Assembly: GCF_964204645.1 (NCBI RefSeq)
Contig: NC_134030.1
Location: 1,719,355-1,783,354, forward strand
Origin: Tubulanus polymorphus
Lineage: Eukaryota > Animalia > Nemertea
Direction: 5' to 3'
Length of the DNA: 64,000 nucleotides
The translations under genes and the position numbers were made by a program. Under the pieces are notes generated by a model. The model made no database searches. It had not been told where the DNA came from and was given only the letters and a program-made list of their open reading frames with translations. Within the stretch, counting starts at the first letter, position 1; each line of letters opens with the position of its first letter. Of the stretch, positions 1-27,800 are shown in pieces.

Positions 1-580
1 GAAAATACATAATATATCAGATTGTGGTTATCATGGTAATCATGGTATGAATAAATTAGCATGGACGCAGTAAATTTGTTCTAGCATCATTTGTACTGGA
101 CGTGAGGGTGCCCTCGCCCGCTGGGCGTTTTTGCAGCTTTAGGCATATAGAAAAAGTAAAAATATTTAATCATTTGAAAATATATCTAGCCTCTCATACA
201 GTTAAGTACTTTTACTTGCCTTATTCTTAAGCATGATATAAATGAATTATGCTGGACGTGAGACAGAAACGGAAAGAAAACAGGCCGGCCCAATTCCTGG
301 CCACCTTCATACCGAATGTTGAGTCAAAAAGGTGCTTTGGGCTTTAAAGAATTGAAGACACTATTGTAAGCCGAAATAATTGTGGAATTGGACTAAAATT
401 AAATCAAAAAATATGTGGTACATGTTATAGTTGATTTTTTTTCAGTGAAGGCATATTAGGCGCACATGAACGACTCATGCGTTCAAGGCATATCCCTTCA
501 CTTATGAATATTTTTAAGATCAGTTAATAAATCCGGAATTGTCCCCGAACGAAGCCGCTCCTCCAATAGGAATCTCCCAG
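1..580. repeat. Direct segmental duplication of about 2146-2727
   Basis: Near-identical sequence at an offset of about 2146 bp; 1938-2170 is also repeated at about 2752-2980. Confidence 0.9.
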
Positions 581-764
581 AGGCAATTTAATTGATGGGC
601 ACATTTTCAAAATTTGTTTTGGTTAGCGGGCCCCCGACACAGAGTTATGTAAACTGGTCACAACTTTTAACTACATACAAAAAAATTGAATGCATTGAAA
701 TTGTATTTGGAGACTGAACTTACTTGGTGCTTGAAAGTCGGGAGGCGTCTCTGGAGGGGTGCTA

Positions 765-795
<31 letters not shown>

Positions 796-3727
796 TGTTG
801 TTGTTATTTGACAGATTAGAAACAGGCGTCTCCGGAGGAGTGCGCTGCTGCTGCTGCTGTTGTGATTCACCGACTGTAAATGGAAATAATATAAAAATAA
901 ATGCAACAGAAAATGAACACAACAGGCACTTATTACACGGTAGTTCAGTAGAATGAAGGGGTCTGGGTACAAAAACGTGTATTTTAAGATTATCAGTATA
1001 TATTTCCGTGAGGAATTTCATAAAAACCGGCACGTACGAGGGAAGTGAGGCATGTGAGATTGAGGGCGTCACTGATACTTACATTTAGCAGCGGTGACCT
1101 AGCCTGCGAGGCAAACTGACGCTAGAAATGAAAATAAAAAAATACATTAGTCAAATTCATTAACGTTGCTAAGTTCAAGTTGCTGGTTTTTTAAACAATT
1201 TTAATAAGAAAAAAATATTCAGGTATAGCTAGCACTATATCAGGAACGTAGCTTGAGGCGGTTCGGGGGGGTTCGAAAATTCAGTTCCTCGCAAAGAAAA
1301 ATTAAAAACAGAAATGTTAAACTTACAAATATTGAAATTTGTTCATTTAATCAAAACCTTCGTTATATCAATAGAAATCTCCCAGAGGCAATTTAATTGA
1401 TGGGCACATTTTCAAAATTTGTTTTGGTTAGCGGCCCCCGACACAGAGTTATGAAAACTGGTCACAACTTTAACCGTTTTAGCTCCATACAAAAAATTAA
1501 ATGCGTTGAAATTGTATTTGAAGACTGAACTTACTTCGCGCTTGGAAGTCGGGAGGCGTCTCTGGCGGGAGGGGTGCGCTGCTGCTGCTGCTGTTGTTGT
1601 TATCCGAATTCAGAGGTGGCGATCGGCCTGGCGACCCAAAGTAGAGACGCTAGAAATTAAAAAATAATATAAATATATTAGTCAATTTCATTAAAGTTTA
1701 AATTTTCAACATTTTTATTGTAACGTTCATTAGTTAATAAATTAGCATGAAGCGATGAATTTGTACTCACAGGTGCATATGGACTTGATGTAGAGGGACC
1801 CCCTTGTCCGCTGGGTGCCTTTTTGGTGGCTTTTGACATCTAAAAACATTAGTTATAATATTAAATAATATGAAAATATATAATATATCGAGCCAGTGAT
1901 ACAGTTGAGTACTTTCTTACAACTATTCTTAATCATGAATAAATTGAAAATATATCATATATCGAGCCAGTCAAACAGTTCAGTACTTTCTAACAACTAT
2001 TCTTAATCATGAATAAATTAGCATGGAAACAGTAAATTTGTACTAACAGTAGGATACGGGCTTGATGTTGAGGGCCCGCACCCCACGTTTTTTTCACTGC
2101 TTTCGGCATTATCTAGAAAAATAAGTAAAACTATAAAATCATTCGAAAATACATAATATATCAGATTGTGGTAATCATGGTAATCATGGTATGAATAAAT
2201 TAGCATGGACGCAGTAAATTTGTTCTAGCACCATTTGTACTGGACGTGAGGGTGCCCTCGCCCGCTGGGCGTTTTTGCAGCTTTAGGCATATAGAAAAAG
2301 TAAAAATATTAAATCATTTGAAAATATATCTAGCCTCTCATACAGTTAAGTACTTTTACTTGCCTTATTCTTAAGCATGATATAAATGAATTATGCTGGG
2401 CGTGAGACAGAAACGGAAAGAAAACAGGCCGGCCCAATTCCCGGCCACCTTCATACCGAATGTTGAGTCAAAAAGGTGCTTTGGGCTTTAAAGAATTGAA
2501 GACACTATTGTAAGCCGAAATAATTGTGGAATTGGACTAAAATTAAATCAAAAAATATGTGGTACATGTTATAGTTGATTTTTTTTCAGTGAAGGCATAT
2601 TAGGCGCACATGAACGACTCATGCGTTCAAGGCATATCCCTTCACTGAAAGAATATTTTTTAAATCGGTTAACAAATCCGGAATTGTCCCCAAACGAAGC
2701 CGCTCCTCCAATAGGAATCTCCCAGAGATTTTCGAGTAGTAATGATATTAAATAAATTGAAAATATATCATATATCGAGCCAGTCAAACAGTTCAGTACT
2801 TTCTAACAACTATTCTTAATCATGAATAAATTAGCATGGAAACAGTAAATTTGTACTAACAGTAGGATACGGGCTTGATGTTGAGGGCCCGCACCCCACG
2901 TTTTTTTCACTGCTTTCGGCATTATCTAGAAAAATAAGTAAAACTATAAAATCATTTGAAAATAAATTATATATCAGATTGTCAAACGGTTCAATACTTT
3001 CATGGTATTAATAAATTAGCATGGACGCAGTAAATTTGTACTAGCACCATCGTTTGTACTGGACGTGAGGGTGCCCTCGCTCATTGAAATTCCCTTTTGT
3101 TTACCATGAGGTAACATTTCAGATGGAGCCACTTTGACTATAATAAACGGTTGTAGTTCTACAGTTCACTGCTTCAGGTTTTCTATTGCAATATGTCACT
3201 ATTGAACAAGAAACAAGAAATCAATCGAAGTTTGTCCGAACTGGTTTTTCAGTTTTTCTCCACTCGTCTATAACGGGCTATCAATCAATATGGTCGAATG
3301 TGCAGAATGTTCCAGCTGATAAAAACTGGGTTCCAAAATAATCAGCCCTTTGCATGTGATGATGCGAACGATCTGCCTGGGTGCACCCTGGTATAGATTT
3401 GACGATGCAGTAATGTATGACGGACATTACCTGTCAGTAGCAGAAGCAGGGTTTAATATTCTATATATATAAATTTCGGTTTCAAGCTCAAGAATGATGA
3501 CTTCAAACAGGCGTTTACGATAACTTACTTCAATTCCGGACATGGAAATGTTAAAACGTCGTTTTTGTTGTTGTTGTTGTTTTTCAGTTCTTATTGCATA
3601 CGGGCTTGATGTACTTGGACACGCGCCCCGTGTTTTTTTTCATTGCTTTAGGCATAATCTAGAAAAACAAGTAAAAATATTTAATCATTTGAAAATATAT
3701 CAGTCGGTCTTATTCTGGTTCAGTGAA

Positions 3728-3870
3728 CTAATTCTCTATATGGTGCATGTAGGGGTCCAGGGACACCACATCCACTAATTCTCTATATGGCGCATGTAGG
3801 GGTCCAGGGACACCACATCCACTAATTCTCTATATGGTGCATGTAGGGGTCCAGGGACACCACATCCACT
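3728..3870. repeat. 47-bp minisatellite (3 copies)
   Basis: Unit ctaattctctatatggtgcatgtaggggtccagggacaccacatcca. Confidence 0.95.
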
Positions 3871-4985
3871 TAGTTGTTGGGCCCGGGCGCTTTCACCCTT
3901 CTTGCTGAAAATCAACTGATATCCTGAATTCTGACTAATTACAGATTGAAAACTGTGATTCACAAGTGCATAATCAATTATTTCAATCCAAATAAGATTT
4001 TCTTAGCTACAGTTTAAATCATCTTAGTTTAATGAAATATGAAAACAAATAAAGATTCTTACCTCCGTCAGATCTCCTTAAACACCCGCCCACGGACTCT
4101 TTCTGACCATCTTTTGGCACCCGGGGGCGGCTGTCTGACAGGCCGCTGCTGAGGCGAATTTTTTTGGGCGTGGGGGAGGGGCAGCAGCGGGCGACAAAGG
4201 ATTAACCGGTGGTGGTAATATCCTATCGGGAACCAAGTTTCTTTTAAACTCCCTCACCAAATCACCAAATGGGCAGTCGTCTAAAATGTTGATCACTGTA
4301 AAATAAAAATAGAGAGAAATATTACAAATTATTTTTATTCAGCAGTTAAATTGTACAATTATTCGTTATCTATGATTTCCTGATGAGATTTACTGTTTGA
4401 GCATCCAGAGATTCCAAACTTTGTCGTTTAACCAATAATTGGTTTAACGATATCACACGGCACCTGCTGAACTCTTTGTTACGTGTATCAGTCTTATATA
4501 TGTATTTATTACTTATATTTGTGTAAGGATTGTGTGACGTGACAGTGAATAATTAGCATAATTAATGCAAACTGGATTTCGTCTACGGACGGATGAAAAG
4601 TGAACGCAATAACTATAGTCACAAGTGAGATAAAAGAAATTAATTAGTTTGAACTTGAAATAGATATAGCTGTCGTGCTGGATTGGTGAAAAAACCTGTA
4701 AAAATAAAATAAAACAAATTATTAGATGGATATTCATGAATGGAAATGACAACTGTAGAGATAGCATCATTGATATATTACTTCTACGATGATGAGACTT
4801 AATCGAATTTGAATTTATTCCTAATTCGCATAATTTATGCATAACAGCTACTACCCTCTATTTTCAAATTACAAATTGAAATAAGCCTGATTTATTAGAA
4901 AATAGTTATCATTTACCGGCGTAGAAACACCACTGGGTGGCGTTGTGGGTAAAAACTCAATTCCAGAAATGGAAACATCAAAAGG

Positions 4986-5019
<34 letters not shown>

Positions 5020-5158
5020 GTTCTAGTAGCGTAAGGGCTTGACGTTGAGGGCCCGCGCCCCGGGGTTTTCTTAGAGCTTTTGGCATTATCTAGAAAAACA
5101 AGTAAAAATATTAAATCATTTGAAAATATATCAGTCAGTCTTATTCTGGTTCAGTGAA

Positions 5159-5678
5159 CTAATTCTTTATATGGTGCATGTAGGGGTCCAGGGACACCAC
5201 ATCCACTAATTCTCTATATGGTGCATGTAGGGGTCCAGGGACACCACATCCACTAATTCTCTATATGGTGCATGTAGGGGTCCAGGGACACCACATCCAC
5301 TAATTCTCTATATGGTGCGTGTAGGGGTCCAGGGACACCACATCCACTAATTCTCTATATGGTGCATGTAGGGGTCCAGGGACACGACATCCACTAATTC
5401 TCTATATGGTGCATGTAGGGGTCCAGGGACACCACATCCACTAATTCTCTATATGGTGCATGTAGGGGTCCAGGGACACCACATCTACTAATTCTCTATA
5501 CGATGCATGTAGGGGTCCAGGGACACCACATCCACTAATTCTCTATATGGTGCATGTAGGGGTCCAGGGACACCACATCCACTAATTCTCTATATGGTGC
5601 ATGTAGGGGTCCAGGGACACCACATCCACTAATTCTCTATATGGTGCATGTAGGGGTCCAGGGACACCACATCCACTT
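5159..5678. repeat. 47-bp minisatellite (about 11 copies)
   Basis: Same unit as 3728-3870. Confidence 0.95.
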
Positions 5679-6624
5679 AGTTGTTGGGCCCGGGCGCTTT
5701 CACCCTTCTTGCTGAAAATCAACTGATATCCTGAATTCTGACTAATTACAGATTGAAAACTGTGATTCACAAGTGCAATAATCAATGATTTCAATCCAAA
5801 TAAGATTTTCTTAGCTACAGTTTAATCATTACCAAGTGGAGCTAGGAGCTGATCTAATGTGTTTTTCATCAGCTAATCATTCATATTTAGGCCTCTATCT
5901 AATACATCTGTATGATACTTACGATGATTTTAAACGAATCTGACTGTCCAATACGACGTCTGTGAAACGAATGATTCGATCAGCTGACCGCTGGTCACTG
6001 TTCAGTAGTGTTCGCTATAAAAGAGAAAACATATTCATACAATGACAACCAATTCATATATATAGGAGTATAATATAATGATGATAATAGAAAAACTATC
6101 AGATTAAGAAATAAAGAATATCATAATATCAAATAAATTGAAAATCCATCATATATCGTGCCACAGTTCAGTACTTTCCTTACAACTATCCTTAATCATG
6201 GTATGAATCAATTAGCATGAAAGCAGTAAATTTGTACTTACAGCAGCATACGGGCTTGACGTTGAGGGGCCCGCGCCCCGTGTTTTTTTCATAGCTTTTG
6301 GCATAATTCGTAATGTGGATGGGCTGGTGTCCCATGTTTTTTGTTTGCTTTTAGCATACTTGAATGGTTAATGCTTAACATCTCTCCCAGATTGTATTGG
6401 CTTGAAACCTGCCTTATTGGTATCTAGAAAAATATGTATAACTATTTAATCATTTGAAAATACATTTTATAATTAGTCAGTCATACAGTTCAGTACTTTC
6501 TTACACTTATTCTTAAGCATAGTATGAATAAATTAGCATGAAAAGAGTAAATTTGTAGTTACCAGCATACGGGCCGGCGCCCCACATTTTTTCATGGCTT
6601 TTGGCATTGTTTTCTTTGTTTGTG

Positions 6625-6825
6625 GCAGCAACTATGGGTCGGTCTGTCTTGAGTTTGTTGGTTGTTGCAGCAGCTATGGGTCTGTCTTGAGTTTGTTGAT
6701 TGTTGCAGCAGCTGGGTCAGTCTTGAGTTTGTTGGTTGTTTCAGCAGCTATGGGTCAGTCTTGAGTTTGTTGGTTGTTTCAGCAGCAGCAGCTATGGGTC
6801 AGTCTTGAGTTTGTTGGTTGTCTTG
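6625..6825. repeat. About 35-40-bp degenerate tandem repeat
   Basis: gcagctatgggtcagtcttgagtttgttggttgtttca, about 5 copies. Confidence 0.8.
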
Positions 6826-9800
6826 ATTTTTTTCTTCAGGAATTCAAGAACAAAGTAGTCGCATGTAGGTAGACACATTCATGAATCACTCAGTGTCTTC
6901 CTGTCCCACCATAACTTCCTTGATCCTCATTACTCGGATTTATTCTCTGAACCACTTTTCCATGTTTGTTGTGGTTTGTTTGTTTTGATTTGCTGGTGGT
7001 TTAAGCATGCATGTAGAGGGAGCTCTATCAATCCAGGAATAGTCAGCTCACAAGCAGCCCCTGCCCCAAAAGGTTTAGACATATTTTCAAAAGCTCTTGT
7101 TCTGTAGAACCGAGAGCGGAGCTCTGACTTGTTCCCCTCACTGCTGAGGTCTACTTTCTCTGATTCGCTGATTGGCTTCTCTTTGGTACATTTTAGATGA
7201 TCAAAAACTAGAAACTGTCATGCGTTTATTCATTTTGGTATGTTAAAATTCTTTTACAGTAAAGGCATATTAGGCACATCAAAACAAATCCGGAATTGTC
7301 CCCGAACGAAGTGGCTCCCTCCACTCTCCATCAGTATGCCGGGCCACCACCTCTACCTCTCGGGCCACTCGATCCCTCGCCAGCTTTTTGGGCGAGTGAA
7401 CGAGTGACCGCCCGAGATACGGATGGAGGAGCAGGACCCGCACCTGCCCCAGCCCCACCACCATCCCTCCTCGGCCTCTTCCTATTAATTCTTACCCCTT
7501 CCTCCTGATTGCCTTGATCAGCTGCGCCATCCGCAGTGGCAACTCTTGCCTCCCCTCCCTGAGGAGCCACGACGACCGCAACTTTTCTTTTCCTTTTCGT
7601 GCGAGTTTTTTTTGGCGGTGGTCGTGTCTGTAAAGAGAAAAAAATGAACAATAAGTATTTAGTATAATACACCTATGTGCGTATAATACACCTATGTGAG
7701 TCCTTCGCTATTAAACACATAGAACTGTGGAACTGGATCCCGAGGCTAATCTAAATGCGCGCAACTGAGTCCAAGTGCAACTAAAGCACACAACTGCGGA
7801 TCAGATAAATCATTGGTAGATTCACTTGTAAAATATCTCGCTAAGAACAAACTAAAAACTGTAGAATGTTGTTGAAACTGTTGTGTGTTATTCATTTGGG
7901 TATATGTTATATTTGAATTTTTTTCAGTGAAGGCATATTAGGCGCACATGAACGTCTCATGCGTTCAAGGCATATCCCTTCACTGAAAGAATATTCTTTA
8001 GATCAGTTAACAAATCCGGAATTGTCCCCGAACGAAGTGGCACCCTCCACTCTCCATCAGTATGCCGGGCCACCACCTCTACCTCTCGGGCCACTCGATC
8101 ACTCGCCAGCTTTTTGACGAGTGACCGCCCAAGTTACGGATGGAGGAGCAGGAGGAGCAGGACCCGCACCATCTCCAGCCCCACCACCATCCCTCCTCGG
8201 CCGCTTCCTATTTATCACCTCCCCTTCCTCCCGATTACCTTCGTCAGCCGCACCATCCGCCGGGACCACTCTTGCTCCTCCTCCCTGCGGAGCCACGACG
8301 ACCGCAACTGGTACTTTTCGGTTTCTCTTGGTTTCCCACCATCTTTCAAAAGAGAACTATCAATATATCATTAGCTACAAGGAAACTTTTCAGAAACTTT
8401 TTCAGGTCATTCTTTCTTGTATTATTAGCATTTGATTCTCTATATATCGTCAGAACATGGACTCAGAGTGTTTCTTTAATGGTTAAGAATGTCTCTTTAA
8501 CCAACATCCCCCTAGCCTGCTTCCTACATATCCCTTCCCTTTCCTCCTGATTACCTTTGATCCCCACTGCCTAGCAGCTAACAGCTGCTGCTATTTTATC
8601 TGGTTCACATGTTTTGCAGATAGTGTCTGTTATGCTATAGTTGTTCTTTTAATCGTTTAACTTCTTCATCTGAAATTTCATTATTCTAATTTCAGTTTCA
8701 CGCAGGAAATGGTTCATGAAAATCTGCATTGAGACTGGGACGAAATGTGCATTGAGACAGATGAAATCTGCATGAACAGAGATATACTTTAAGATCCCCA
8801 TTTTATCCATCGGAGTGAATGTACATCCACTACTCACAGGTAGCAAACCTACAAACGCTAAACACTCATCCCTGGGCCCTGATTCAAAATAAAAAAAAAA
8901 GATTAAATTAAGAATTAACATTTTTATGAATCAGTGATCAGTTTCATAAAATAATTCCTAAATTAATTTTAGGGGTTTATTATTTCAGATTGAAATGAAT
9001 TCTTCATGTTTATGCAATTCTCATTATCTTTCATTGCAGCATTTATATATTCAATTTTAATCATACATGTGAAATATATAATGTATTTTCAGGGAAACGT
9101 AAACAAGAAAGGAAGGGAAGAAAGAGAAAGGAAGGGAAGAAAGAGAAGGGAAGGGAAGAAAGAGAAGGGAAGAAAGAGAAGGGAAGAAAGAGTTGGATGA
9201 TTAATGCGCACTTATTCTCCATTCCGAATTCCTGTATTCGACTCTAGGTGATCATCATACGAACGAGATATAGAAAAAAAACATTACTGAAGTCATCTCT
9301 ATTTTTTAGTCTCAATTTGTATTTCTAATTCAATTTACTAAGTGTGTAAGTCATAATTTGGATAAGTCGTCACATTATTGAAGTCATCTCTATTTTGAAG
9401 TCTCAATTAGTATTCAGTTTACTTCAGATAACGTAATTTGGTTTAATCACAAGTCGTCAACATTGGTTTAATCACAAGTCGTCAACATTATAATCAATGT
9501 AACTACAGTGACTACATTATTGTCCTTTCATTGAGAAATTTATGTTAATTTTTGATTTCTGGGATAAATCAAAATTCAAATGTTATCATTTTTTGTATCA
9601 AAAATTGTAAAAAATTGAATAATTTGTGTGCTATTGAAACATTCAGTTATGGGGAGTTTTTAGCTCAGAAAACTTTGAGCCTGTTTATACAAGTGTTGTA
9701 ACAAGTGTTGAACAATTCAAAGATCATGTTTTTTATACTTTGTCATGCAAGAAAGAAAAAATTTTTTCTAGTATATTGATGTTTCCAAAAAAACATATGA

Positions 9801-11899
9801 TTCAACTTTAAAAGGCCAACAAGCCTTCTAATAAAACTAGTTTGTCATATATATATATATTACTTGGTCATTGTCAAGTTTTTTAAAAAATATTTTGGTT
9901 TTCTCAGCTTTCTCTGGTGGAAATTTCTTCGTGGAATTCCTCTTCTATACAAGTTCCTCCTCAGACTGTTTTAATGCGAGAGTTTATAACAACCGGATCC
10001 TCAGAAAATGGTCGGAGTGCCAAGTCTTCGATTTAAGATCACCAGTCTTATCTGAGACCATAAGTTCACTAGCAAGTTTCACTAGCGATTCCAACAGCTA
10101 TAGGATGGAACAGTATTATTATATAGGTCACCACTGTGCAATTGAGCCCAGATAATCAGAAAAAGATAAAAGTGAAGATATGTGATGGGATTCATTGAAA
10201 ATTTTGCATATATAATTAATTCATTGAACTACTTAATTTGTATGACTTATTTTTTGGGAATTTTCGAATTTGTCATCAATAACTAGTATATATTTCTTTT
10301 CAAGTTGTGAGCGATCTAGTTCTCTGTCGACCCATTGAAAATGAATCGACTCTGAACTGTAGAACTGAACCCAGGGAGCTGAATCTCGCGTGCCACAGCA
10401 AGATACAGAGCTCTTCAATGTCTTAACCGTCAGGTGCTGCCCCTAAACAAATCAATAGCGGTAAATCTGTGAACTAACTTATAGCTCGCTTGCCAGAGTA
10501 GAATCATAGCGAGCTGTCTAAAATCTTGAACCGTCTAGTGCTGCCCCTTAATCGATATGTATCGGAAAAATGAATTTATTACTCGCATGCCACAGTAGTT
10601 GAGTAGTTGGAACATCATGATAGACTCGTTTTTCTGTGCAGCTATAACGGGAACTATTTCAGATCTGATAATGAATATAAACTCAGTCACAGTTCGATAA
10701 CAAACGCCGCTGGGTGAAATTGATGTAAACAAATAATCCTGTTGAAATTGAATTTAGTTTAAGATATATTTTCGTGGTAGTTTTTATTTCCAAGCTGTTT
10801 ACGTTCACTTCAAATGATGAAACGATGAAACCATATTAAATACATCCCTGTTCTAGTGGGGATTTTGAGTTTTGGTCCTTTCCGTATCTTCTAGAAACAT
10901 CAAGTAGAAAGGCATTAACTGAACCCTATGTCTTTAACTTCAGGAGTCTATGGAGTTTTCGGATGCCTCTTTTCCTCACTTCTTGCATTCGTCACTATTA
11001 GAAATCCGGACAAACTGAATTCAGTTCGACGAGGCCGAAGAACAGAAGACCAAAGAGTGATCTGCACTAGCCGCAGGGTTCGTGTTGGCTTGGATCGGTG
11101 GGAGGCAATCAAACCCCGACACGTGAAGATGTATCCTCAAAAATGGATACCGGAACGCTTCTCTGGTTTACGATGATTAGTCTGCAGGGATAACTCTTTG
11201 GCGGGGCGTGATCGCGTGAATAGCCCAAACTAAACCTTCAGAGTTCACTGTACTACAGCATACAACATCTGATAACTTGCATAATAAAGCGCGGCGTGCA
11301 TGAAAAGAATTGTATAAATGCGGGCAAGATTCCGTGCCCTGGCAATCGAACGCCGGAGTGGAGGTATTCCATACACTGGTAGGTGAGTCGGAGCATAGAC
11401 TGGTTGCTTGTCCCATAGAGACCGGTAACCAGTCTAGCCACCTCACGATCAGTCTACATTGAAAAACCATTACTGAAATATGGTTGACGGAAATATTCAT
11501 TTCATATCAGATTCTGAAATATTTTCTCGTATTGACTACAAAATTTTTATTATCTTTATAAGATAAATCTGCCAAAGCTCAACAATTTGAATTAGTGAAA
11601 ACCGATGTGCGAAGTCGTCAATTCAGTAGCCCGATAGAGCCCGGTAACCAGTCTAACTGTCAATGTTCATTGCGCGGGAATGAACGGGCAACCAGTCTAC
11701 GATGAAAAATCATTTCTGAAAAATTATGAACGGAGATATTCATTTTACTTTGAATTTTGAATTATCTTATAAAACTGACAGCCATATTAACCAAAGTATT
11801 AATAGTAAATCTGATAAAATCTAATACCGGTTTTAGAATAGGTGAAAACTGATTTATGTGATGCCGTCGGTTCAGAAGACTGATCCGTAGAATCGTTCG

Positions 11900-15296: not shown

Positions 15297-15345
15297 TTTG
15301 TCAATCATCATATCAAGATTTGCAATCCCAGTTGCCTTCAAGTTT

Positions 15346-15740: not shown

Positions 15741-15808
15741 CTGAACCAGAATAAGACTGACTGATATATTTTCAAATGATTTAATATTTTTACTTGTTTT
15801 TCTAGAAG

Positions 15809-15871
15809 ATGCCAAAAGCTGTAAAAAAAACCCGGGGCGTGGGGCCCTCAACATCTAGCCCCTATAATAAA
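15809..15871 (+). CDS. Gene A coding exon 1 (MPKAVKKTRGVGPSTSSPYNK)
   Basis: tttttctag|AAG ATG ... AAT AAA|gtaagt. Confidence 0.65.
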
Positions 15872-18800
15872 GTAAGTACAAATTTACTGCTTCCATGCTT
15901 ATTTATTCATCCCATACTTAGTATTTTGTACCCCTGGGTCCAGTTTCACAAAAAGGATAAACGCCTTAATCGATTTAAGATAAACTGAATTAATGAAGAA
16001 ATTAAATCGATTTAAGAGTTAAACCTGTTTGTGAAACTAGGCCCTGAATTGCATCTAGAATGAAAAAAAAGAAAAAAAAATATTGAAAATAACGTTGGTG
16101 AAATATTTCTGGATCTTTCTGGATTTCTGCTCAATGCATCGTTTAGTAAAATATCGATATTCTCTAAAAGTAAAGATATAAGAATAAAAATATTGTATTG
16201 AATCGTGATTAGTTACTGTATGCGCTGCTAGTTGTTGCCCAACCCATAGCCTCATTTCTCTCCATTCTAAATTTGCATTGTTTAACATTGTCTGGTCGCT
16301 ATGGAAACTATTTATTTAAGTTTCTTTGTGGTATCCATGGCAACAGTAACGTTTAGGTAGTGGCACCAATTATGGGTCCCAACGTTCCCATGGCGATACA
16401 TGAGAACATTTATCCTATTTTTGACCTACATGACGTAAGATGGTAGTGAGTCGATGACGTCATTTTCGTCTCACCACTAATGAAAAAAAAAAGAAATGAA
16501 AAAAAAGGAAAAAATCGTTAGAATTACGTTTATGAAATTTTTCTGGATCGGCTAAATGTATTGTTCCATTAAATATCGACATTCTCTAAAATTATAGGCA
16601 TCAATATCAAAATGATGATACAGCAGACTCCGCTTAACTCTGTTCTATTTGGACCATTAATTAACCGAATACCAACTTTTTAAAATTTTAGGATTTTTAC
16701 GTTAAGGATCAGAAAATGTGTATGCAATTTCAACCGGGTACCGAGTAGGGTGGCCGAGTCTACTGTAGTCTGCTGCCCCCTCGAATCCATTACCTTATTA
16801 TCTCTCAATTTGCATTGTTTGACCTCGTCTGGTTGCTATGGAAACTATTTAGTTATATCAGGATCAACGGTTTTTTCGAGGTAACCAGTGGCAACATTTA
16901 ACAGGCGTGTCCATCCTAGAGATAAACTGTCTGATTTCACAGCCACATCCGTCCTAGAGATAAACTGTTAGATAAACTCTGATTTCGCGTCTGTCCTATT
17001 TCTTGTCATTGTATGAATATGTTTTCTCTTTTATAGGGTACAGCGCAGCAACAACAACAACAACAACAGCAACAGCAACAACAACAACAAAAATTTAATA
17101 TTTCTATGTCCGGAATAGACGTAAGTTATCGTAAACGCCTGTTTGAAGTCATCATTCTTGAGCTTGAAACCGAAATTTATATTATAGAATATTAAACCCT
17201 GCTTCTGCTACTGACAGGTAATGTCCGTCATACATTACTGCATCGTCAAATCTATACCAGGGTGCACCCAGGCAGATCGTTCGCATCATCACATGCAAAG
17301 GGCTGATTATTTTGGAACCCAGTTTTTATCAGCTGGAACATTCTGCACATTCGACCATATTGATTGATAGCCCGTTATAGACGAGTGGAGAAAAACTGAA
17401 AAACCAGTTCGGACAAACTTCGATTGATTTCACTCACATTTACAGAAATTTGGTCCGACCCCAAAACCATTTACTTACACTATACAAATCAGATCAGGTT
17501 TTTAACATTGTCTTTGATTGTATTTTCAGTTTTTGCCGACAACGCCGCCGAGCGGTTCTTCTACGCCGGTAAGTGATAACTATTTTCTAATAAATCACGC
17601 TTATTTCAATTTGTAATTTGAAAATAGAGGGTAGTAGCTGTTATGCATAAATTATGCTAATTAGGAATAAATTCAAATTCGATTAAGTCTCATCATCGTA
17701 GAAGTCATATATTAATGATGCTAAAGTTGTCATTTAAATTAAGTGTTATATTTACTACTTCATTTGCTTCATGACCCAAAAACCTCTACTATATAACTAC
17801 TGGTTTTGTTCTAATCTTGGAGAATTTGCTGCAAAATTTACTTATCATTTGTTAAACAGTTTTTATTGAAAACCTGAATCAGTGATACATGCATTCATGA
17901 ATATCCATCTAATATTTTGTTTTATTTTATCTTTACAGGATTTATCACCGATACAGCACGTGGACGTAAGAGATTAAACATTGATCTTGAATTTTAAGTT
18001 CAAACTAATTTATTTTTTATCTCACTCGGGACTATAGTTATTGCGTTCACTTTGCGTCCAGTTGTCTCGGCTAGTTTTTGATTTATCGTGTTGATAATTG
18101 GTTTATATACTCAAACTCAAAATATCGGCGCAATTGGAATTAAGATGGCGCACTTGTATGTCCATTTTTTTCCCCGGCAAAATTAGCACTTTAGCAGATT
18201 TTAAGGATCAATTCTGTTGTTATATTACATTGAAATCAGAGTTTAATATATATCGGTATAGAGCAGGTTTTTGCTCTAGTTATAAATAAAGTTATAAATA
18301 ATCTCATGACATGTTCTGTATATGTGTAGTGAGTTTCAATGTCTTTGGTTCCTTTTAAACCAGGGGGAGTTAAATTTGAAAATGTCAGATCGTCGAGCAT
18401 TTCAGACCGCTTCCAAAGTGGGTCCCTGCACCCCTAGTTATACCGTTAATATTTTAATAATATATTGATATACCATACATTGATATCGGTCTTGTAATTG
18501 GATCAACAACCATGAGATCAAAACACAGCAAATATGAACCTGCTGTGAATCAATAGATTTGTGATAAATGTAATGAAATTGTTATTTTTCATATTGACTT
18601 TTTGAGTTAAGGGTCTGTTGTATAAGAGTCTTTGGTCTCGCGTGTCAATGTATGATATCAATCTGTATTTCCTCGTTCCAATGTTTAAAAGGTGTTCGTC
18701 ACCTTATATTAATAAACTACTTTTACCGTTAGATGGCGCCATAAGTGTGATATTTGATTTATGGGATACCCGCAAAACCAGCTATTCCACCAGATGGCGC

Positions 18801-21800
18801 AACGAGTAGTAGGTCGTTCGTTGTCAAAATTAGTTCATTTTCGATGAACTTTGAACTGGTTTGAAGAAGAAATACTTTCATTCTTCTAATCTGATATCGA
18901 TTTAGTTTTCATTAATAATTGATTCATTTAAGAGAACAATTCATTCAGATTTAATTGAAATGTACAAGAAAATCGAACGCAGACGACCAACTATTTACTA
19001 GCGACACCTGGTGGATCCTCGCCTGCCATAAGTGGAATCCTCGATTGCCACAGTAAGACTGCGGGTATCCCATTGTTTGGCGTGTGAATTAAAGTAAAGT
19101 TAGAAAACGGATGTTAAACTTTGTTGTGAAACGAAAGCGTTTTGGAGATTTTTAAACCAATCAAATCAATATTTTGATATTACGCTTGAAACCCTTCCCA
19201 CTCATATTCTACTTACTAAGTATATATTCTTATTTCCGTGGAAATCATGGTGAGTGGCGCCATCTATACAGTGGAGTTAGCTTTATAAATCGAGCATGAT
19301 TCGACAAGTGGCTCCATCTATTCCCTAATACTGAAGCGAGGTAACCAGCAGCGCCCTCATATACAGGAAATGAACGCCTATCAAGTTTAACAATGCACGG
19401 TGTATTGACCACAGCGACCGGTGATAATTATATCAATGTTGATTAGCTATTGCCATAGACAGGTCCGTAGCGTTTGACTGGACCAGAACGGGGCCCCCTA
19501 ACCAAAACAAATTTTGAAAACGTGCCCAGATAAATTGCCTCTGGGAGATTGATTTAACGAGGTTTTGATTAAATGAACAAATTTTAATATTTGTAAGTTT
19601 AGCATTTCTGTTTTTAATTTTTCTTTGCGAGGAACTGAATTTTCGAACCCCCCCGAACCGCCTCAAGCTACGTTCCTGATATAGTGCTAGCTATACCTGA
19701 ATACTTTTCTCTTATTGAAATTTTCTAAAAAACCAGCACCTTGAACTAATGAACGTCATAATGAAAATGTTTAAAAATTCAACCGTTAATGAATTTGACT
19801 AATGTATTTTTTTTATTTTCATTTCTAGCGTCAGTTTGCCTCACAGCGAAGGTCGCCGTCGCTTAATGTAAGTATCAGTGACGCCCTCAATCTCACATGC
19901 CTCACTTCCCTCCTAATGTAACCATTTTTATGAAATTCCTCAAGAAAATATATACTAGTAATCTTAGAATACACGTTTTTGTACCCAGACCCCTTCATTC
20001 TACTGAACTACCGTGTAATAAGTGCCTGTTGTGTTCATTTTCTGTTGCATTGATTTATATATTATTTCTATTTACAGTTGTCAAACAACAGCAGCAGCAG
20101 CAGCGCACCCCTCCCGCCGGAGACGCCTCCCGACTTGCAAGCAAGAAGTAAGTTCAGTCTTCAAATACAATTTCAATGCATTCAATTTTGTGTATGGCGT
20201 TAAAACGGTTAAAGTTGTGACTAGTTTTCATAACTCCGTGACGTCATATTTCCATCGAGTACCGGACCCTTTCCAATGTTTTTTGCCAATTTGGATTGAA
20301 TGATCGCCAGCGGTTTTTCTATACGACCCGGCTCTGCTGTATTGCATTTAGCCATCCTTTTTCTTGGCGTTTTTTATAAGGTGTTTGATTTTGTCTCTAA
20401 GGGATTTAGGAATTTAAGAGACACTTGTACTCTCTATACAGTGAGTTTGTTCTGTTTTTGTTCCCTCGTGAATTTTATTTTTGTTTGGTATAATTTGATT
20501 TATCATAATCAAATCAAATCAGTGCATATTTCTTGAATTGCGTGTAAGTTATAATGTTATCAAATATCTTATATTTAAACCGAATATTTAATTGTTGTAT
20601 TTTTAATGCCGCTCCCTGCTAAAGTCGAGCGTCGTCATCGTGAGGGATGCGGTCATCTGTTCGGGCCCTGATTACGTTCTGTGTTCATCCTGTTGGGCTA
20701 CATCGGGCGTTATATGAGTTAATCCTTCCTCGACTTGCGGATTGTGGTCGGAAGATCTATGGGTTCGGGCCGATAAGTCCCGGAAACAGAAAGTACAGTT
20801 TCTGCCTATGTGCCCATTGATGTCTCTATTTCAGAACATCACAGCGGTCGCCGGCTGTACAAGCACGGTCGGCTTCCCAACTCCATTCTCTGAGGAGGAT
20901 CGCTGGTTCTCTAGTAACGGTCAGTCACCAGTCAATCAACAGTTCAGCTGGTTCAGTTTCCCAGATATCGGCGCGCGACAGTCGGGATACCTGCACAGGA
21001 ACTCAGGTCCGGTCCGGGCTACTCCGAGCACCAGTCCGGTCCAGGCCTCACTGGGTAATGAACATCTGGTCCGGTCCGGGCGGCTTCGAGCACCGGTCCG
21101 GTCCAGGCATCACCAGATACTGAACATCCTGTCCAGTCAGCTCCGTGCACCGGTCCGGTCCAGGCATCACCGGGTACTGAACATCTGGTCCGGTAGCTTC
21201 GAGAACTGGTCCGGTCCAGGCATCACCGGATACTGAACATCCTGTCCGGTCAGCTCCGTGCACCGGTCCGGTCCAGGCATCACCAGTTACTGGTCCGGTC
21301 CGGGCAGCTTTGAGCACCAGTCCATTCCAGGCATCACTGAGTACTGAACATCCAGTCTGGTCCGGTCCAGGCAACACCGGGTACTGATCATCCAGTCCGG
21401 TCCGGTCCAGGCATCACTGGGTACTGAACATCTGCTCCGGTAGCTTCGAGAACTGGTCCGGTCCAGGCATCACCGGGTACTGAACATCTGGTCCGGTAGC
21501 TTCGAGAACTGGTCCGGTCCAGGCATCACCGGGTACTGAACATCTGGTCCGGTAGCTTCGAGAACTGGTCCGGTCCAGGCATCACCGGGTACTGAACATC
21601 TGGTCAGGTAGCTTCGAGAACTGGTCCGGTCCAGGTATCACCGGGTACTGAACATCTGGTCCGGTAGCTTCGAGAACTGGTCCGGTCCAGGCATCACCGG
21701 GTACTGAACATCTGGTCCGGTAGCTTCGAGAACTGGTCCGGTCCAGGCATCACTGAGTACTGAACATCCAGTCTGGTCCGGTCCAGGCATCACCGGGTAC

Positions 21801-24800
21801 TGATCATCCAGTCCGGTCCGGTCCAGGCATCACTGGGACTGAACATCCAGTCTGGTCCGGTCCAGGCATCACCGGGTACTGAACATCCAGTCTGGTCCGG
21901 TCCAGGCATCACCAGTTACTGAACATCCAGTCCGGTCCGGTCCAGGCATCACTGGGTACTGAACATCCAGTCCGGTCCGGTCCAGGCATCACCGGGTTCT
22001 GATCATCCAGTCCGGTCCGGTCCAGGCATCACCGGGTACTGAACATCCAGTCCGGTCCGGTCCAGGCATCACTGGGTACTGAACATCCAGTCCGGTCCGG
22101 TCCAGGCATCACTGGGTACTGAACATCCAGTCTGGTCCGGTCCAGGCATCACCGGGTACTGAACATCCAGTCTGGTCCGGTCCAGGCATCACTGGGTACT
22201 GAACATCCGGTCCGGTCCGGTCCAGGCATCACCGGGTACTGAACATCCAGTCTGGTCCGGTCCAGGCATCACTGGGTACTGAACATCCAGTCTGGTCCGG
22301 TCCAGGCATCACCGGGTACTGAACATCCAGTCTGGTCCGGTCCAGGCATCACTGGGTACTGAACATCCGGTCCGGTCCGGTCCGGTCCAGGCATCACCGG
22401 GTACTGAACATCCAGTCCGGTCCAGTCCAGTCATCACCGGGTACTGAACAGGGTTCGTCGCGGTGCTTGAAAAGCTTGAAATGGCTTGAATTTGAAAAAT
22501 ACTACTCAAGCGCTTGAAAACAGCTTGAAAATAGATCGAAAGCTTGAAATAATTATTTTTGACTTGAAATAAAAAGTTATGGCTTGAAATGCTTGATTAT
22601 CACAAATTTTCTTCTTCACGAATTTTTTTCGATGAAATCGCAGACAGAATATGTTCTTGAGTTGTTTCTACGCGTGCGTCATGTTTTAGGCATCAATAAA
22701 GAAATTAATTGAATTGTATTGAATCGCTATGAGACTCTTGTGGTGAAACTCTACGGTGTCTGGAGACATGAACATACGGGGAAATTTCAGTCATGCATGT
22801 TATCGAGCATTGATGTAAAATGGCATTGAAATCCCACACCAGGAGTGAGAGCCATGTTGAAGGCACCGCGACCTAGTCAAAGTCATTGAACATTACAAAT
22901 TTCGTATTAGGCCATACAAAAATCAAGGTCTGTTTGCCGTCATCCGACCGACCCGACTTCAAAGGTACCCAGTGGAAACTTTTTTCTTGGATTCATTGAA
23001 ATAAATTGTATTTTTGATACAAATGGCCGACCCACTGCCGATGTATGAGCTATGTATGTTTGAAGTTAAGTGTGCATCATGTGAAAACATGCCTCGACTA
23101 TTTACTTGAAGTTTTCCAGGAAACTGGCAGTGTTCCAATAAGCTGCCATTCATTCTAAAGCTGGTAATGTTATAGCGTGCATATATTCAATCTACTGTTT
23201 CATTTTGAACGCAGATTTCGGATGTTGTTTCCGCTAAAAGTGGTGATGATAAATTTGTTGTTTTTTTTTGCCCCAAAATTTTGCAAAAAAAATGATGCTA
23301 CCTTCCTACTGACTTATCCCAAAAATTTTAGTAGGTGTAACGGCAAAACAGACAATTAATTTGGGATGGCCAAATATCCAAATCTTGATTGATATGAATA
23401 TTTAAGCTAGGAAATGCTGAAAATCATTGTGATGAACAGGTTTCATCTCTAACAGAATCGTATCAACTCGGAGGTTCCACTGGAATCAAAATTTTACCTC
23501 TTTTTTAACATTTTTATACGAACCTGTTCAAAATAGGCAAATTGGCTGCGACTAACGAAAATTGCTTCCAACGTGCCTTAAAAAATAGCTTGAAAATGGT
23601 ATAAATCTAGCTTGAAATGGCTTGAATTTCACCTGAGCTTGAGACAATGAACCCTGCTGAACATCTGGTCCGGTCAGCTTCCAGCACCGGTCCGGTCCAG
23701 GCATCACTGGGTACTGAACATCTGCTCCGGTCAGCTTTGAGCACCGGTCCGGTCCAGGCATCACTGAGTACTGAACATCCAGTCCGGTCCGGTCAGCTTC
23801 CAGCACCGGTCCGGTCCAGGCATCACCGGTTACTGGTCCGGTCCGGGCAGCTTTGAGCACCGGTCCGGTCCAGGCATCACTGAGTACTGAACATCCAGTC
23901 CAGTCCGGTCAGCTCCGAGCACCGGTCCAGGCATCACCAGGTACTGAACATCTGGTCTGGTCCGGGCGGCCTGGCATCAATGTTTCGAATTTAAAACATA
24001 GTTATCATGGTTCTAGGTTTGGTAGAGGGCGCTCTTCTACCAGATGCAGGAGCGAGGTCACCTTCACGGAGATCGAGATCGAGGGATTATGATTGATTCT
24101 GTAGGAACCATCATCATTCATCAGTTCAGGTCGAGGGACCGTTTAGGAAGTTCACGTCTTTCACGTCGAGGGACCGTTTAGGAAGTTCACGTCTTTCACG
24201 TCGAGGGACCGTTAAGGAAGTCGTCACAATAATCAGGATTTCCGCGATTTCGAAAGTAAGATTTTAAACTTGTTATTGTCATTGTAAGCTACCGCAGTTA
24301 CAGGTAAGCCTATTCTTGATTGCCCGAGACAGGCGTGCAGATATTGTTCCCGACTTAAGTTTTTGGTTGATTTTCTTGTGACTTGTTTGTTTTAGGGGTG
24401 AGATGGATGAGCCTTATTGTTTTTTGACATATATAGGTCATCCAAGATGGCCGCCACAGCCATTTCAATGTGTAAAATAGCCATTTTGAAGCTTGTGACA
24501 ACTCTACAATCTACAGTTTCAGACCAATTTACCAATTACTTATTCTGTGGTTTCATAATGGTAAGAGGATGAGCCTTATTGTTTTTGACATATATAGGTC
24601 ATCCAAGATGGCCGCCACAGCCATTTCAATGTGTGAAATAGCCATTTTGAAGCTTGTTACCGCTCTACGGACTTAAGTTTTAAGCTTAAGACTTAAGATG
24701 GCCACCACAGTTATATCAATGTCTTAAATCTTATCCGATTTGGAGCTTGTTACTGCTCTAAGATGTAGAGGTTTAGAGGTTTATAATTTCATTCATACTT

Positions 24801-27800
24801 GTACTGTGGTTTATTTATGGTGGTCAGAGGATGAGACCTATTACAATTTGCATTCTCTACTTGACTCACTGGTCAAGGGTTAATATCTAGTTTGATAAAT
24901 GTGGAGCATGTCGGTGAATCATCCCCCCCCCCTCCCCCGGACTCTGATCTCAATGTCTGATGTCAATCGTCAGCAGTTTCAATGGAATAGGCTCGATTAG
25001 GTGTGGAACAAGTGGAATCCTCGATTGCCACAGTCAAACCTAGAGTATTAAGAGCTCAATTAGGTTCTTCTTTGCGTCTCTTCTCCGGTTGGAGTGCTCC
25101 AGTTTCCACCGAATGGAGGAAGATTAGAGATGTGCAGATTCAAGTCCACCATGCGGACTCCGGCTCCGGCAGCTCAAAACTCAAAATGAATGCTCGGGGC
25201 CAGTGAGAGGTTGTCTATAACGAGCAGCCACCTACTGATCCGGCGTTCCCGGGTCGTATCACGGCGGCTACTGTCCTCAATTCTGAACACCTCCCGACAT
25301 GCGCCCGAAAGCAGGTCACGAGACAATAATCTCGTCAGCTCTCAAAGATCTGGCCAAAAAGAGAGCAATAGAACCAGTACGGGACGAAGCCACATCCGGC
25401 TGGTTTTCATGAATATTTATGCTCCTTAAGACCACAGGGCGTCGATGGACTGTCATTCCTCGAGTGGCACCTGGATATCCCGAGGCTTCCGATGACTAAA
25501 ACAGGGAGGTAATTCAAGGTCTCCGCCGAGGTTAATGGGCGGCTTCATTGGACCTGAAAGATGTCAGGTTCCTATTCACCCGAAATCTCATCAATTTTAC
25601 AGAATGAAGTGGAAACTCCGCCAGTTCCAGTTCAGGTCTCTTCCAGTCGGCCTCAGTACAGCCCACGCCCTGGGTATTTACCAGCTTGGGTCAAGTCCAG
25701 AAGGTACACTACACTCCAGGGCTGGGTTTCATAGATATGGAAGAAAAATAATTCCAGGGATCATTTTGAAATTTGTCAGTTAAAACCATGGTTTCTCATT
25801 GTTAGTCTGGTGGTTGTTACCCAGATTGAGGATTTATCCCTTTGGATAACTTTGATACTCAGTCTATGAAACCGGGTCCTGGAGTATTTGTCTGTTGGTT
25901 TACCTCGACGACTGGTTACTAGTACCAAACTCGACTATAGAATGTCAGGAGGCGGTGACCGCTGTCGACCGCTGTCGTAGACTTAGTTCACCAGTTCCGC
26001 GTAAACTAAGTAAAATCTCACTTGATGCCGTCCCAACAGTTCACATCTCCGGATCAGCACGGTCTTTCCGTCCATGGCTCGAGTAGCCAAACTTCAAGAA
26101 GCGTAGTTACCACAAACGAGAGGACAGCTAGTTATCGGTGACGCCTGTGGCTAAATGCAATACCGCAGTGCCAGGGGTCGTATCTCTGGCTATCTACACA
26201 TTCAGAGAATATTAACTAAAACCATAGGAAAGGGTCAAGCACTACTCCGAAAAAAAACTAATTTTATTTCCAAAAAATTATGATATTATATGGATTGCAG
26301 CTGTGTGGAAGAAGTTTTCAAAATTATTTAGGAGCTTATTATAATTTGAATGCATGAATTGAGAGCAATTTGAAATGTGTTGATATCCGAAAGTGTTTCC
26401 ATTGACTTCACTCATTCACCTGATGAAGCTTCTATACATTAGTACCCAAAGCTTGTGTGTCAAATAAACTAGTTACACGTCCTATAAAGTACTACTTGTC
26501 TCGTTATATATTCTAAACCCCAGTTAACAATTCCAGTAAGTCAGGTTTAGGGAATAGATATTTAAACCTTGAGATGATACCGATGTGATACAATTCCAGT
26601 AAGTCAGGTTTAGGGAATAGATATTTAAACCTTGAGATGAAACCGATGTGATACAATTCCAGTAAGTCAGGTTTAGGGAATAGATATTTAAACCTTGAGA
26701 TGATACCGATTTAATACAATTCCAGTAAGTCAGGTTTAGGGAATAAATATTTAAACCTTGAGATGAAACCGATGTGATACAATTCCAGTAAGTCAGGTTT
26801 AGGGAATAGATATTTAAACCTTCAGATGAAACCGATGTGATACAATTCCAGTAAGTCAGGTTTAGGGAATAGATATTTAAACCTTGAGATGATACCGATG
26901 TGATACAATTCCAGTAAGTCAGGTTTAGGGAATAGATATTTAAACCTTGAGATGATACCGATGTAATACAATTCCAGTAAGTCAGGTTTAGGGAATAGAT
27001 ATTTAAACCTTGAGATGATACCGATTTAATACAATTCCAGTAAGTCAGGTTTAGGGAATAAATATTTAAACCTTGAGATGAAACCGATGTCAGTGATACA
27101 ATTCCAGTAAGTCAGGTTTAGGGAATAGATATTTAAACCTTGAGATGATACCGATGTTATACATTCCCAGTAAGTCAGGTTTAGGGAATAGATATTTAAA
27201 CCTTGAGATGATACCGATGTTATACAATTCCAGTAAGTCAGGTTTAGGGAATAGATATTTAAACCTTCAGATGAAACCGATGTGATACAATTCCAGAAAG
27301 TCAAGTTTAGGGAATAGATATTTAAACCTTGAGATGAAACCGATGTGATACAATTCCAGTAAGTCAGGTTTAGGGAATAGATATTTAAACCTTGAGATGA
27401 AACCGATGTGATACAATTCCAGTAAGTCAGGTTTAGGGAATAGATATTTAAACCTTGAGATGATACCGATGTTATACAATTCCAGTAAGTCAGGTTTAGG
27501 GAATAGATATTTAAACCTTGAGATGAAACCGATGTGATACAATTCCAGTAAGTCAGGTTTAGGGAATAGATATTTAAACCTTGAGATTAAACCGATGTAA
27601 TACAATTCCAGTAAGTCAGGTTTAGGGAATAGATATTTAAACCTTGAGATGAAACCGATGTGATACAATTCCAGTAAGTCAGGTTTAGGGAATAGATATT
27701 TAAACCTTGAGATGATACCGATGTTATACAATTCCAGTAAGTCAGGTTTAGGGAATAGATATTTAAACCTTGAGATGAAACAGATGTGATACAATTCCAG

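What the first reader, a model, noticed from the sequence alone, without database searches (positions are those of the whole stretch)
1535..5089. Paralogs show precise, piecemeal intron loss (semi-processed exon fusions)
Seen in sequence: 1535-1649 (-) is exon 5 + exon 6 fused exactly at the splice junction and in frame (RLYFGSPGRSPPLN|SDNNNSSSSSAPLPPETPPDFQAR). It keeps the outer acceptor and donor, while an unfused ex5/ex6 pair lies alongside (1083-1121, 724-873). 3529-3658 is exon 1+2 fused with intron 2 retained. 4917-5089 is exon 1+2+3 fused (...PSTSSPYAT|RTQQQ...DVSISGIE|FLPTTPPSGVSTP|gtaaat) with intron 3 retained. Three different intron presence/absence states among neighbouring paralogs is unusual. 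Inference: repeated recombination with reverse-transcribed spliced mRNA (cDNA gene conversion, implying germline expression), or recent intron gain, acting as a diversification route in this family.
Basis: partly seen in the sequence, partly recalled or inferred. Interest (0 to 1): 0.85.

Follow-up and report, generated by a model that had tools for sequence, protein, structure and literature searches.

The report
Exact intron losses in decaying gene fragments
Next to a working copy of a fast-evolving, many-copy orphan gene lies a block of broken partial copies in which three introns have been cut out exactly at their splice sites, most likely by copying from spliced RNA; this is a clean local example of a known process, not a new one.

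Summary
All three fused exons are at the stated coordinates. Each is joined at the splice junction with no length change, and each keeps its outer acceptor and donor.

They are not working paralogs. They sit in a minus-strand block (window 1-8560) of truncated, reordered fragments of the plus-strand gene at 15809-32643. Most of these fragments have broken reading frames. This block occurs seven times on contig C6. The intact gene has more than 30 copies that are 95-98% alike.

Direction is loss, not gain. Introns 1 and 2 are present in all intact copies and in the divergent paralogs. The copy lacking intron 5 is a tandem sister of a copy that has it.

The losses fall at three or more different times: introns 1 and 5 before the block multiplied, intron 2 later (two copies only). 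One unique copy looks like an aborted conversion.

Microhomology at the junctions is 0-2 nt, so recombination with reverse-transcribed spliced RNA is the best explanation. No RNA data were available, so expression is untested. A role in diversifying the family is not supported.

Side observations: exons are far more variable than introns, and 300 nt of intron 2 is almost invariant.

The scan's first stage had already noted this same block, read from another window, as a "scrambled exon library".

The parts
1535..1649 (-). Fused exon 5+6 ('unit a'), 115 nt, junction 1608|1607. Six copies in the genome at 97-100% identity.
1650..1735 (-). Retained 3' end of intron 4, with the AG acceptor, upstream of the fused exon.
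1442..1534 (-). Retained 5' part of the intron after exon 6, with the GT donor. It ends at the tandem-duplication junction (gene positions 20240|19489).
724..1121 (-). Sister 'unit b': exon 5 (1121-1083), intron 5 (1082-874) and exon 6 (873-724). Exon 6 is 150 nt with an internal duplication, so its length no longer fits the phase.
564..660 (-). Second occurrence of the same duplication junction, plus the start of a third partial unit. This shows that units a and b are tandem sisters.
3529..3658 (-). Fused exon 1+2, type F2, junction 3592|3591. Frameshift in exon 1 and an in-frame stop. At least 7 copies on C6.
3217..3528 (-). Retained 5' part of intron 2, 99.7% identical to the intact gene.
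4917..5089 (-). Fused exon 1+2+3 (type F1 that has also lost intron 2), junctions 5025|5024 and 4956|4955. 1-nt deletion in exon 1; donor gtaaat. The only other copy is at C6:1494688-1495118.
4591..4916 (-). Retained intron 3 and an exon-4-like piece whose donor site is gone.
4063..4295 (-). Copy of the penultimate exon, joined behind exon 4 by a deletion of about 12.7 kb of the gene.
1..8560 (-). The whole block of truncated, reordered fragments of the gene. All fragments are in minus orientation, head-to-head with the intact copy.
15809..32643 (+). Intact reference copy. Exons: 15809-15871, 17037-17120, 17530-17568, 17939-17965, 19829-19867, 20078-20147, 30887-31116, 32251-32643 (stop).

Best explanation
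The three fused exons are derived, exact intron losses. They lie in a degenerate, rearranged partial duplicate of a many-copy orphan gene.

The most likely mechanism is the classical mRNA-mediated one. A spliced or partly spliced transcript of a family member was reverse transcribed. The cDNA then recombined with a genomic copy (gene conversion), which erased one intron at a time and left the neighbouring introns and outer splice sites in place.

This happened at least three times:
- Introns 1 and 5 were lost before the block was multiplied seven-fold.
- Intron 2 was lost later.
- One unique copy preserves what looks like an aborted conversion.

The resulting pieces are decaying pseudogene fragments, not new functional variants.

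Shown here: exact junctions, polarity (loss), copy numbers, relative timing and broken frames. Inferred: the RNA/cDNA intermediate and germline expression.
For: - Exact junctions with outer splice sites kept.
- Flanking introns and upstream sequence continue collinearly with the intact gene, so these are in-place events and not inserted retrocopies.
- Polarity. The 3' end of intron 1 abuts exon 2 in all intact copies and in the divergent C8 and C3 paralogs. Intron 2 is present in every other member, including C8. Units a and b share the same duplication junction, and b carries intron 5.
- The introns are not dispersed repeats: all genome hits lie inside the family.
- Microhomology between the 5' and 3' junctions is 0 nt for intron 5, 0-1 nt for intron 1, and 0 nt for intron 2 (2 nt if exon 2 already ended in AG).
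- In unit a, exon 5 is only 28/43 identical to its sister's while the flanks are about 86% identical. This is what a conversion tract from another paralog's cDNA would give.
- L033 (C6:678206-678276) is unique in the genome. It reads exon 2, then the first 17 nt of exon 3, then intron 2 from base +20. The 17-mer is identical to that unit's own exon 3, and the switch point is a shared AAACGCC.
- Type F1 exists both with intron 2 (L034, L035) and without it (window, L032). This shows stepwise loss of adjacent introns.
Against: - No RNA data: no run on record as RNA holds the region, and the laid runs behave as DNA.
- No reverse-transcriptase domain was found in the window's ORFs.
- The lost introns are 5' and internal, not 3'-biased as the simplest form of the model predicts.
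- The extra divergence of exon 5 in unit a could simply reflect the family-wide hypervariability of that exon.
- The L033 footprint could also be a polymerase-theta-type templated insertion copied from 400 nt downstream.
Confidence: 0.7

Rival explanations
1. The introns were removed by DNA-level deletion (microhomology-mediated end joining or another double-strand-break repair) without any RNA intermediate.
For: Microhomology-mediated intron loss is described for worms and flies (PMC3698931, found). If exon 2 already ended in ..AG, intron 2 has a 2-nt AG repeat at both borders. The same block shows other microhomology-joined rearrangements, for example intron 1 joined to the next unit's upstream region at GATTTAA. 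L033 can be read as a templated insertion.
Against: Introns 5 and 1 have 0-1 nt of microhomology, yet both were removed to the base. Three separate deletions each hitting both splice borders exactly is very unlikely by chance. In L033 the copied stretch starts exactly at the first base of exon 3.
Confidence: 0.12
2. The fused exons are functional: shorter paralogs or alternative exon cassettes that add protein diversity to the family.
For: Two F1 copies (L034, L035) keep an open exon 1+2 frame and an intact donor. Outer splice sites are kept everywhere. The family is clearly under pressure to vary its exons.
Against: Both exon 1+2+3 copies are frameshifted in exon 1. All F2 copies share a frameshift and a stop. 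Exon 4 of the mini-units has lost its donor, and the penultimate exon would be entered out of phase (TGA at once). Unit b's exon 6 has a length that no longer fits the phase. No intact member examined has lost an intron.
Confidence: 0.1
3. The intron-less state is ancestral, and the intact copies gained introns 1, 2 and 5 recently.
For: On flanking sequence alone, unit a is about equally distant (about 90%) from all other lineages, so its branch is not resolved.
Against: The introns are shared and homologous in intact copies on C6 and C3 and in the divergent C3 and C8 paralogs. Unit a's tandem sister has intron 5. Copies without intron 2 are nested among close relatives that have it. The introns are not mobile repeats.
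Confidence: 0.03
4. Assembly artefact or chimera in a highly repetitive region.
For: The region is a repeat array.
Against: The same fused junctions recur at 2, 6 and 7 or more separate loci with their own substitutions. Contigs from two runs span the exon 5|6 junction without gaps.
Confidence: 0.03

Closest known systems
mRNA-mediated (reverse-transcriptase) intron loss by cDNA-genome recombination. The model is summarised in PMC3652778 and PMC3488318; its attribution to Fink and to the yeast experiments is from my own knowledge.
   Same: Exact removal at splice borders. Reading length preserved. Neighbouring introns and regulatory flank untouched. An adjacent intron lost in a second step. 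The derived state sits among intron-bearing relatives.
   Different: It is seen here in pseudogenised partial duplicates inside a tandem array rather than in a conserved single-copy gene. It affects 5' and internal introns rather than 3' ones. One copy may preserve an incomplete conversion.
Semi-processed (partly spliced) retrocopies and pseudogenes (e.g. PMC2850357, PMC4151081)
   Same: Copies that lack some introns and keep others.
   Different: Those are insertions at new sites with a poly(A) tail and target-site duplications. Here the upstream region and the flanking introns run on collinearly with the parent structure, and no poly(A) end is present.
Microhomology-mediated intron loss (PMC3698931)
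   Same: Precise or near-precise loss of short introns in invertebrate genomes.
   Different: The defining microhomology at the two intron borders is absent for introns 5 and 1, and at most 2 nt for intron 2.
Families with variable exons and homogenised introns, such as MHC genes and venom peptide genes (from my own knowledge, not tested here)
   Same: Exon diversity is 5-10 times intron diversity. One difference block is limited to a single exon. Frames are kept open.
   Different: The product is a disordered, probably nuclear orphan protein with basic stretches that look like nuclear-localisation signals and no signal peptide. Its function is unknown.

Membership tests
mRNA-mediated intron loss | Intron removed exactly at the splice borders, with no bases gained or lost | tested here: met
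   Junctions 1608|1607, 3592|3591, 5025|5024 and 4956|4955 were compared with unfused relatives. There is a one-base ambiguity at 4956.
mRNA-mediated intron loss | The intron-less state is derived relative to intron-bearing relatives | tested here: met
   Tested within the genome only; no sister species was available.
mRNA-mediated intron loss | The parent gene is transcribed and spliced in the germ line | not testable with these tools
   No RNA run holds the region. The laid runs are DNA.
mRNA-mediated intron loss | Bias to 3' introns and joint loss of adjacent introns | tested here: inconclusive
   The lost introns are 1, 2 and 5 of at least 7, so there is no 3' bias. Introns 1 and 2 are adjacent but were lost in two steps.
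Processed or semi-processed retrocopy | Insertion at a new site with a poly(A) tail and target-site duplication, and no parental flank | tested here: not met
   The upstream region, satellite and flanking introns are collinear with the parent. No poly(A) end is visible in the sequence.
Microhomology-mediated intron loss | Shared bases at the 5' and 3' intron borders that allow end joining | tested here: not met
   0 nt for intron 5, 0-1 nt for intron 1, and 0 nt for intron 2, or 2 nt if exon 2 already ended in AG.
Intron gain by mobile 'introner' elements | The intron sequence is a dispersed repeat found outside the gene family | tested here: not met
   All genome matches to intron 5 and intron 2 lie in family loci. 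Only the best 40 candidates are scored, so this is a lower bound.

The most novel reading that the evidence does not exclude
Recombination with reverse-transcribed transcripts may be frequent and still ongoing in this array, and may not be confined to dead copies. On this reading, the exon-limited sequence swaps among intact copies, the exon 5 replacement that accompanies intron 5 loss, and the unique half-converted copy would all come from one RNA-templated exchange process. The head-to-head blocks of retro-derived fragments would then serve the family, either as donor cassettes or as an antisense or small-RNA suppressor locus in a genomic conflict over a rapidly evolving amplified gene.
Probability: 0.1. 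Interest if true: 0.8.

Novelty: new member of a known kind. Interest (0 to 1): 0.42.

Why it matters
How animals lose introns (through RNA, or by DNA repair) is still argued mainly from old events, where donor and recipient can no longer be compared. This locus holds several young, exact losses next to sister copies that still carry the intron. It also holds one copy that may be a conversion caught half-way. That could make it a natural test bed for the question once germline RNA and population long reads exist for this species.

As it stands, it is a tidy example of a known process acting on pseudogene fragments. It is not evidence for a new way of diversifying proteins.

Tried and rejected
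The other blocks are therefore known only from match coordinates and from loci L032-L036, L044 and L045.
- RNA evidence: no RNA holder was found. The four laid runs behave as DNA, and reads are cut at the simple repeats next to the junctions.
- Identity of the gene: Pfam on the two largest exons gave nothing above threshold. HMMER of the last exon against 1.84 billion representatives gave no hit. Exons were searched one by one by reference. I did not build or search a joined spliced model.
- Reverse transcriptase nearby: seven ORFs of 90 aa or more, at 8.1-24 kb of the window, have no Pfam domain.
- Conserved intron 2 element as a structured RNA: no Rfam family and no folding signal on either strand.
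- 'Short intron 1' copies seen in a first BLAST map turned out to be exon 1 plus 110 nt of intron 1, joined to the next unit's upstream region at a GATTTAA microhomology. They are not an intermediate intron state.
- A flank-based tree could not place unit a (support 0.007-0.24). Polarity for intron 5 rests on the shared duplication junction instead.
Full report
SETTING

The window is G000:C6:1719355-1783354 of a 268-Mb eukaryotic assembly. An earlier, unchecked note of this scan calls it a ribbon-worm genome.

On the plus strand lies an intact multi-exon gene. I read its exons from the sequence:
- exon 1: 15809-15871 (63 nt)
- exon 2: 17037-17120 (84 nt, with a glutamine run)
- exon 3: 17530-17568 (39 nt)
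- exon 4: 17939-17965 (27 nt)
- exon 5: 19829-19867 (39 nt)
- exon 6: 20078-20147 (70 nt, ends in phase 1)
- penultimate exon: 30887-31116
- last exon: 32251-32643 (stop codon)

All borders are GT-AG. I did not look for a further exon between 20148 and 30886, and exon 6 fits the phase of the penultimate exon directly.

The sequence just upstream of the ATG is itself a good acceptor (pyrimidine run plus AG), so 'exon 1' may be an internal exon.

The product is a serine-, proline- and glutamine-rich protein with basic stretches that look like nuclear-localisation signals. The two largest exons, searched separately and by reference, have no Pfam family. The last exon has no relative among 1.84 billion representative proteins.

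The gene is one of more than 30 copies that are 95-98% alike. They are spaced about every 33 kb on C6 (1.06-1.74 Mb) and on C3 (0.41-0.73 Mb). More divergent paralogs lie on C3 and C8.

THE OBSERVATION

Window 1649-1535 (-) is a single 115-nt exon:
- It is preceded by the last 85 nt of intron 4 with its AG.
- It is followed by GT and 93 nt of the next intron.
- The exon 5 part ends ..AAT at 1608 and the exon 6 part starts TCGG.. at 1607.
- The neighbouring unfused pair reads ..AAT|gtaagt and ..acag|TCGG.

Window 3658-3529 (-) is exon 1+2, joined at 3592|3591, followed by GT and intron 2.

Window 5089-4917 (-) is exon 1+2+3, joined at 5025|5024 and 4956|4955, followed by intron 3.

Some intact C3 copies begin exon 2 with AGAAC right after ..atag. 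That is exactly what follows the last codon of exon 1 in the fused copies. The spacing between conserved anchors equals that of the spliced exons.

The one ambiguity is the last base of exon 2. It is G in the fused copies and C, A or other bases elsewhere.

WHAT THE FUSED PIECES ARE

A map of window 1-15300 against the intact gene shows that 1-8560 is a block of gene fragments. All fragments are in minus orientation, head-to-head with the intact copy, but they are truncated, repeated and out of order:
- several lone copies of exon 1 with the first 50-110 nt of intron 1;
- pieces of the last exon;
- a 'mini-unit' (upstream satellite, exon 1 to exon 4, then the penultimate exon), made by a deletion of about 12.7 kb;
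- a 2.x-fold tandem repeat of the segment from late intron 4 through exon 6.

Frames are mostly broken:
- The exon 1+2+3 copy has a 1-nt deletion in exon 1. Its only twin, L032 at C6:1494688, has a 2-nt deletion.
- All type-F2 exon 1+2 copies share a +1 frameshift and run into a stop.
- Exon 4 of the mini-units has lost its donor.
- The unfused exon 6 at 873-724 is 150 nt, which no longer fits the phase.
- Two F1 copies elsewhere (L034, L035) still have an open exon 1+2 frame.

The block itself is repeated. Type-F1 exon 1+2 occurs once in each of seven blocks on C6. F2 occurs at seven places. The fused exon 5+6 occurs in six blocks at 97-100% identity. The exon 1+2+3 form occurs in two blocks only.

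DIRECTION OF CHANGE

- Intron 1. Its last 97 nt abut exon 2 in every intact copy and in the divergent paralogs C8:15612266, C3:1314157 and C3:1235644.
- Intron 2. It is present in every other member, including C8. It is also present in the closest relatives of the copies that lack it (F1 in L034 and L035; exon 3 of L033).
- Intron 5. A tree of the flanks does not resolve the position of the fused unit. However, the fused unit and the unfused unit beside it are tandem repeats that share one and the same rearrangement junction (gene position 20240 joined to 19489). That junction is present twice, near window 1441 and 634. Their common ancestor therefore post-dates the rearrangement, and one descendant still has intron 5.

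None of the introns behaves as a mobile repeat: every genome match lies in a family locus. Gain is therefore rejected, and all three states are losses.

MECHANISM

Exact removal three times over, with the outer splice sites and the flanking introns left in place, calls for a spliced template. Four points bear on this.

1. Microhomology. The bases shared between the 5' and 3' borders number 0 for intron 5, 0-1 for intron 1, and 0 for intron 2 (2 if exon 2 already ended in AG). The end-joining route described for worms and flies (PMC3698931) therefore has little to work with.

2. Exon 5 in the fused unit. It is only 28/43 identical to its sister's, while the flanks are about 86% identical. That fits a conversion tract copied from another paralog's cDNA. 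It could also be the family's general exon 5 variability.

3. The L033 copy (C6:678206-678276, unique in the genome). It reads exon 2, then the first 17 nt of exon 3, then intron 2 from base +20. The 17-mer is identical to that unit's own exon 3 some 400 nt downstream. The return into the intron is at a shared AAACGCC. This is what an incomplete conversion by an exon 2-exon 3 cDNA would leave. A templated insertion during end joining is the alternative, but it would have to start by chance at the first base of exon 3.

4. In-place events. The fused pieces keep the upstream region and flanking introns and have no poly(A) end. They are in-place conversions, not inserted retrocopies.

TIMING

- Losses of introns 1 and 5 pre-date the seven-fold multiplication of the block.
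- Loss of intron 2 is shared by two blocks only.
- The L033 event is single-copy.

The process therefore recurred over time. Whether the two exon 1+2 types (F1 and F2) go back to one loss or two is not resolved.

WHAT IS NOT SHOWN

Expression is untested. No run on record as RNA holds the region, and the four runs I laid cover introns and spacers alike, as DNA does.

In that same call, contigs of X1 and X2 span the exon 5|6 junction without gaps. These runs may belong to the assembly's own project. The independent Illumina run X6 was cut at the simple repeats beside the junctions.

No reverse-transcriptase domain was found in the window's ORFs.

The other blocks could not be fetched in full.

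SIDE OBSERVATIONS

- Among intact copies, nucleotide diversity is 0.055-0.12 in exon 5, 0.12 in exon 3 and 0.09-0.19 at the ends of exon 2, against 0.005-0.026 in the introns. All exon lengths stay multiples of three and all frames stay open.
- Between L015 and L026, 20 of the 24 differences in 941 nt fall inside the 39-nt exon 5.
- Conversely, the first 300 nt or so of intron 2 are 96-100% identical in every member, including the C8 paralog, whose neighbouring exon 3-exon 4 region is only 76% identical. There is no Rfam match and no folding signal.

These patterns say that the intact family is functional and under pressure to vary. They do not need the fused fragments to explain them. A spliced cDNA could not swap one 39-nt exon while leaving both flanking introns in place.

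VERDICT

This is a new, well-preserved instance of mRNA-mediated intron loss acting on decaying partial duplicates in a tandem array. It is of moderate interest as a natural test bed for the mechanism. It is not a new mechanism, and it is not a demonstrated route of protein diversification.

Noticed in passing
window 19829-19867 and the same exon in L001-L030; also exons 2 and 3 in L037-L060: Exons are far more variable than introns among the 95-98% identical copies. Diversity is 0.055-0.12 in exon 5 against about 0.011 in its flanking introns. All changes seen in exon 5 alter the amino acid, and frames and lengths are kept. L015 and L026 differ at 24 sites in 941 nt, 20 of them inside the 39-nt exon 5: a sequence swap limited to that one exon.
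   Followed up: partly
window 17121-17431 (5' part of intron 2): About 300 nt of intron are 96-100% identical in every family member on C6, C3 and C8, although the C8 paralog is only 76-87% identical elsewhere. There is no Rfam family and no folding signal on either strand. Either strong constraint or very recent conversion.
   Followed up: partly
L033:1084-1125 (G000:C6:678206-678276): A unique hybrid: the end of exon 2, then 17 nt of exon 3, then intron 2 from +20, switching at a shared AAACGCC. Possibly an aborted cDNA conversion, or a templated insertion.
   Followed up: partly
window 15790-15808; also 5090-5110 and 3659-3680 on the minus strand: The sequence just before each exon 1 ATG is a strong splice acceptor (pyrimidine run plus AG). 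The 'first' exon may therefore be internal, preceded by an untranslated exon or a spliced leader. A truncated exon-1-like piece is joined head-to-tail exactly at this point (window 6340-6290 minus strand; also L035 and L036).
   Followed up: no
window 3727-3870, 5158-5677, 15346-15737: A 47-bp satellite array sits directly upstream of exon 1 in the intact gene and in the mini-units, and is carried along in every duplication.
   Followed up: no
G000:C6 0.66-1.74 Mb and C3 0.41-0.73 Mb: Higher-order layout: runs of two to five intact copies about 33 kb apart are each preceded, head-to-head, by one block of scrambled fragments. One block-plus-gene pair near 0.66-0.68 Mb is inverted as a whole.
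   Followed up: partly
window 1-582 and 2145-2727: A 583-nt unit, 97.8% identical between the two places. It consists of exon 1 with its upstream region and the start of intron 1, joined to the last 80 nt of the coding sequence plus the 3' untranslated region. It is a 'both ends only' deletion derivative of the gene.
   Followed up: no
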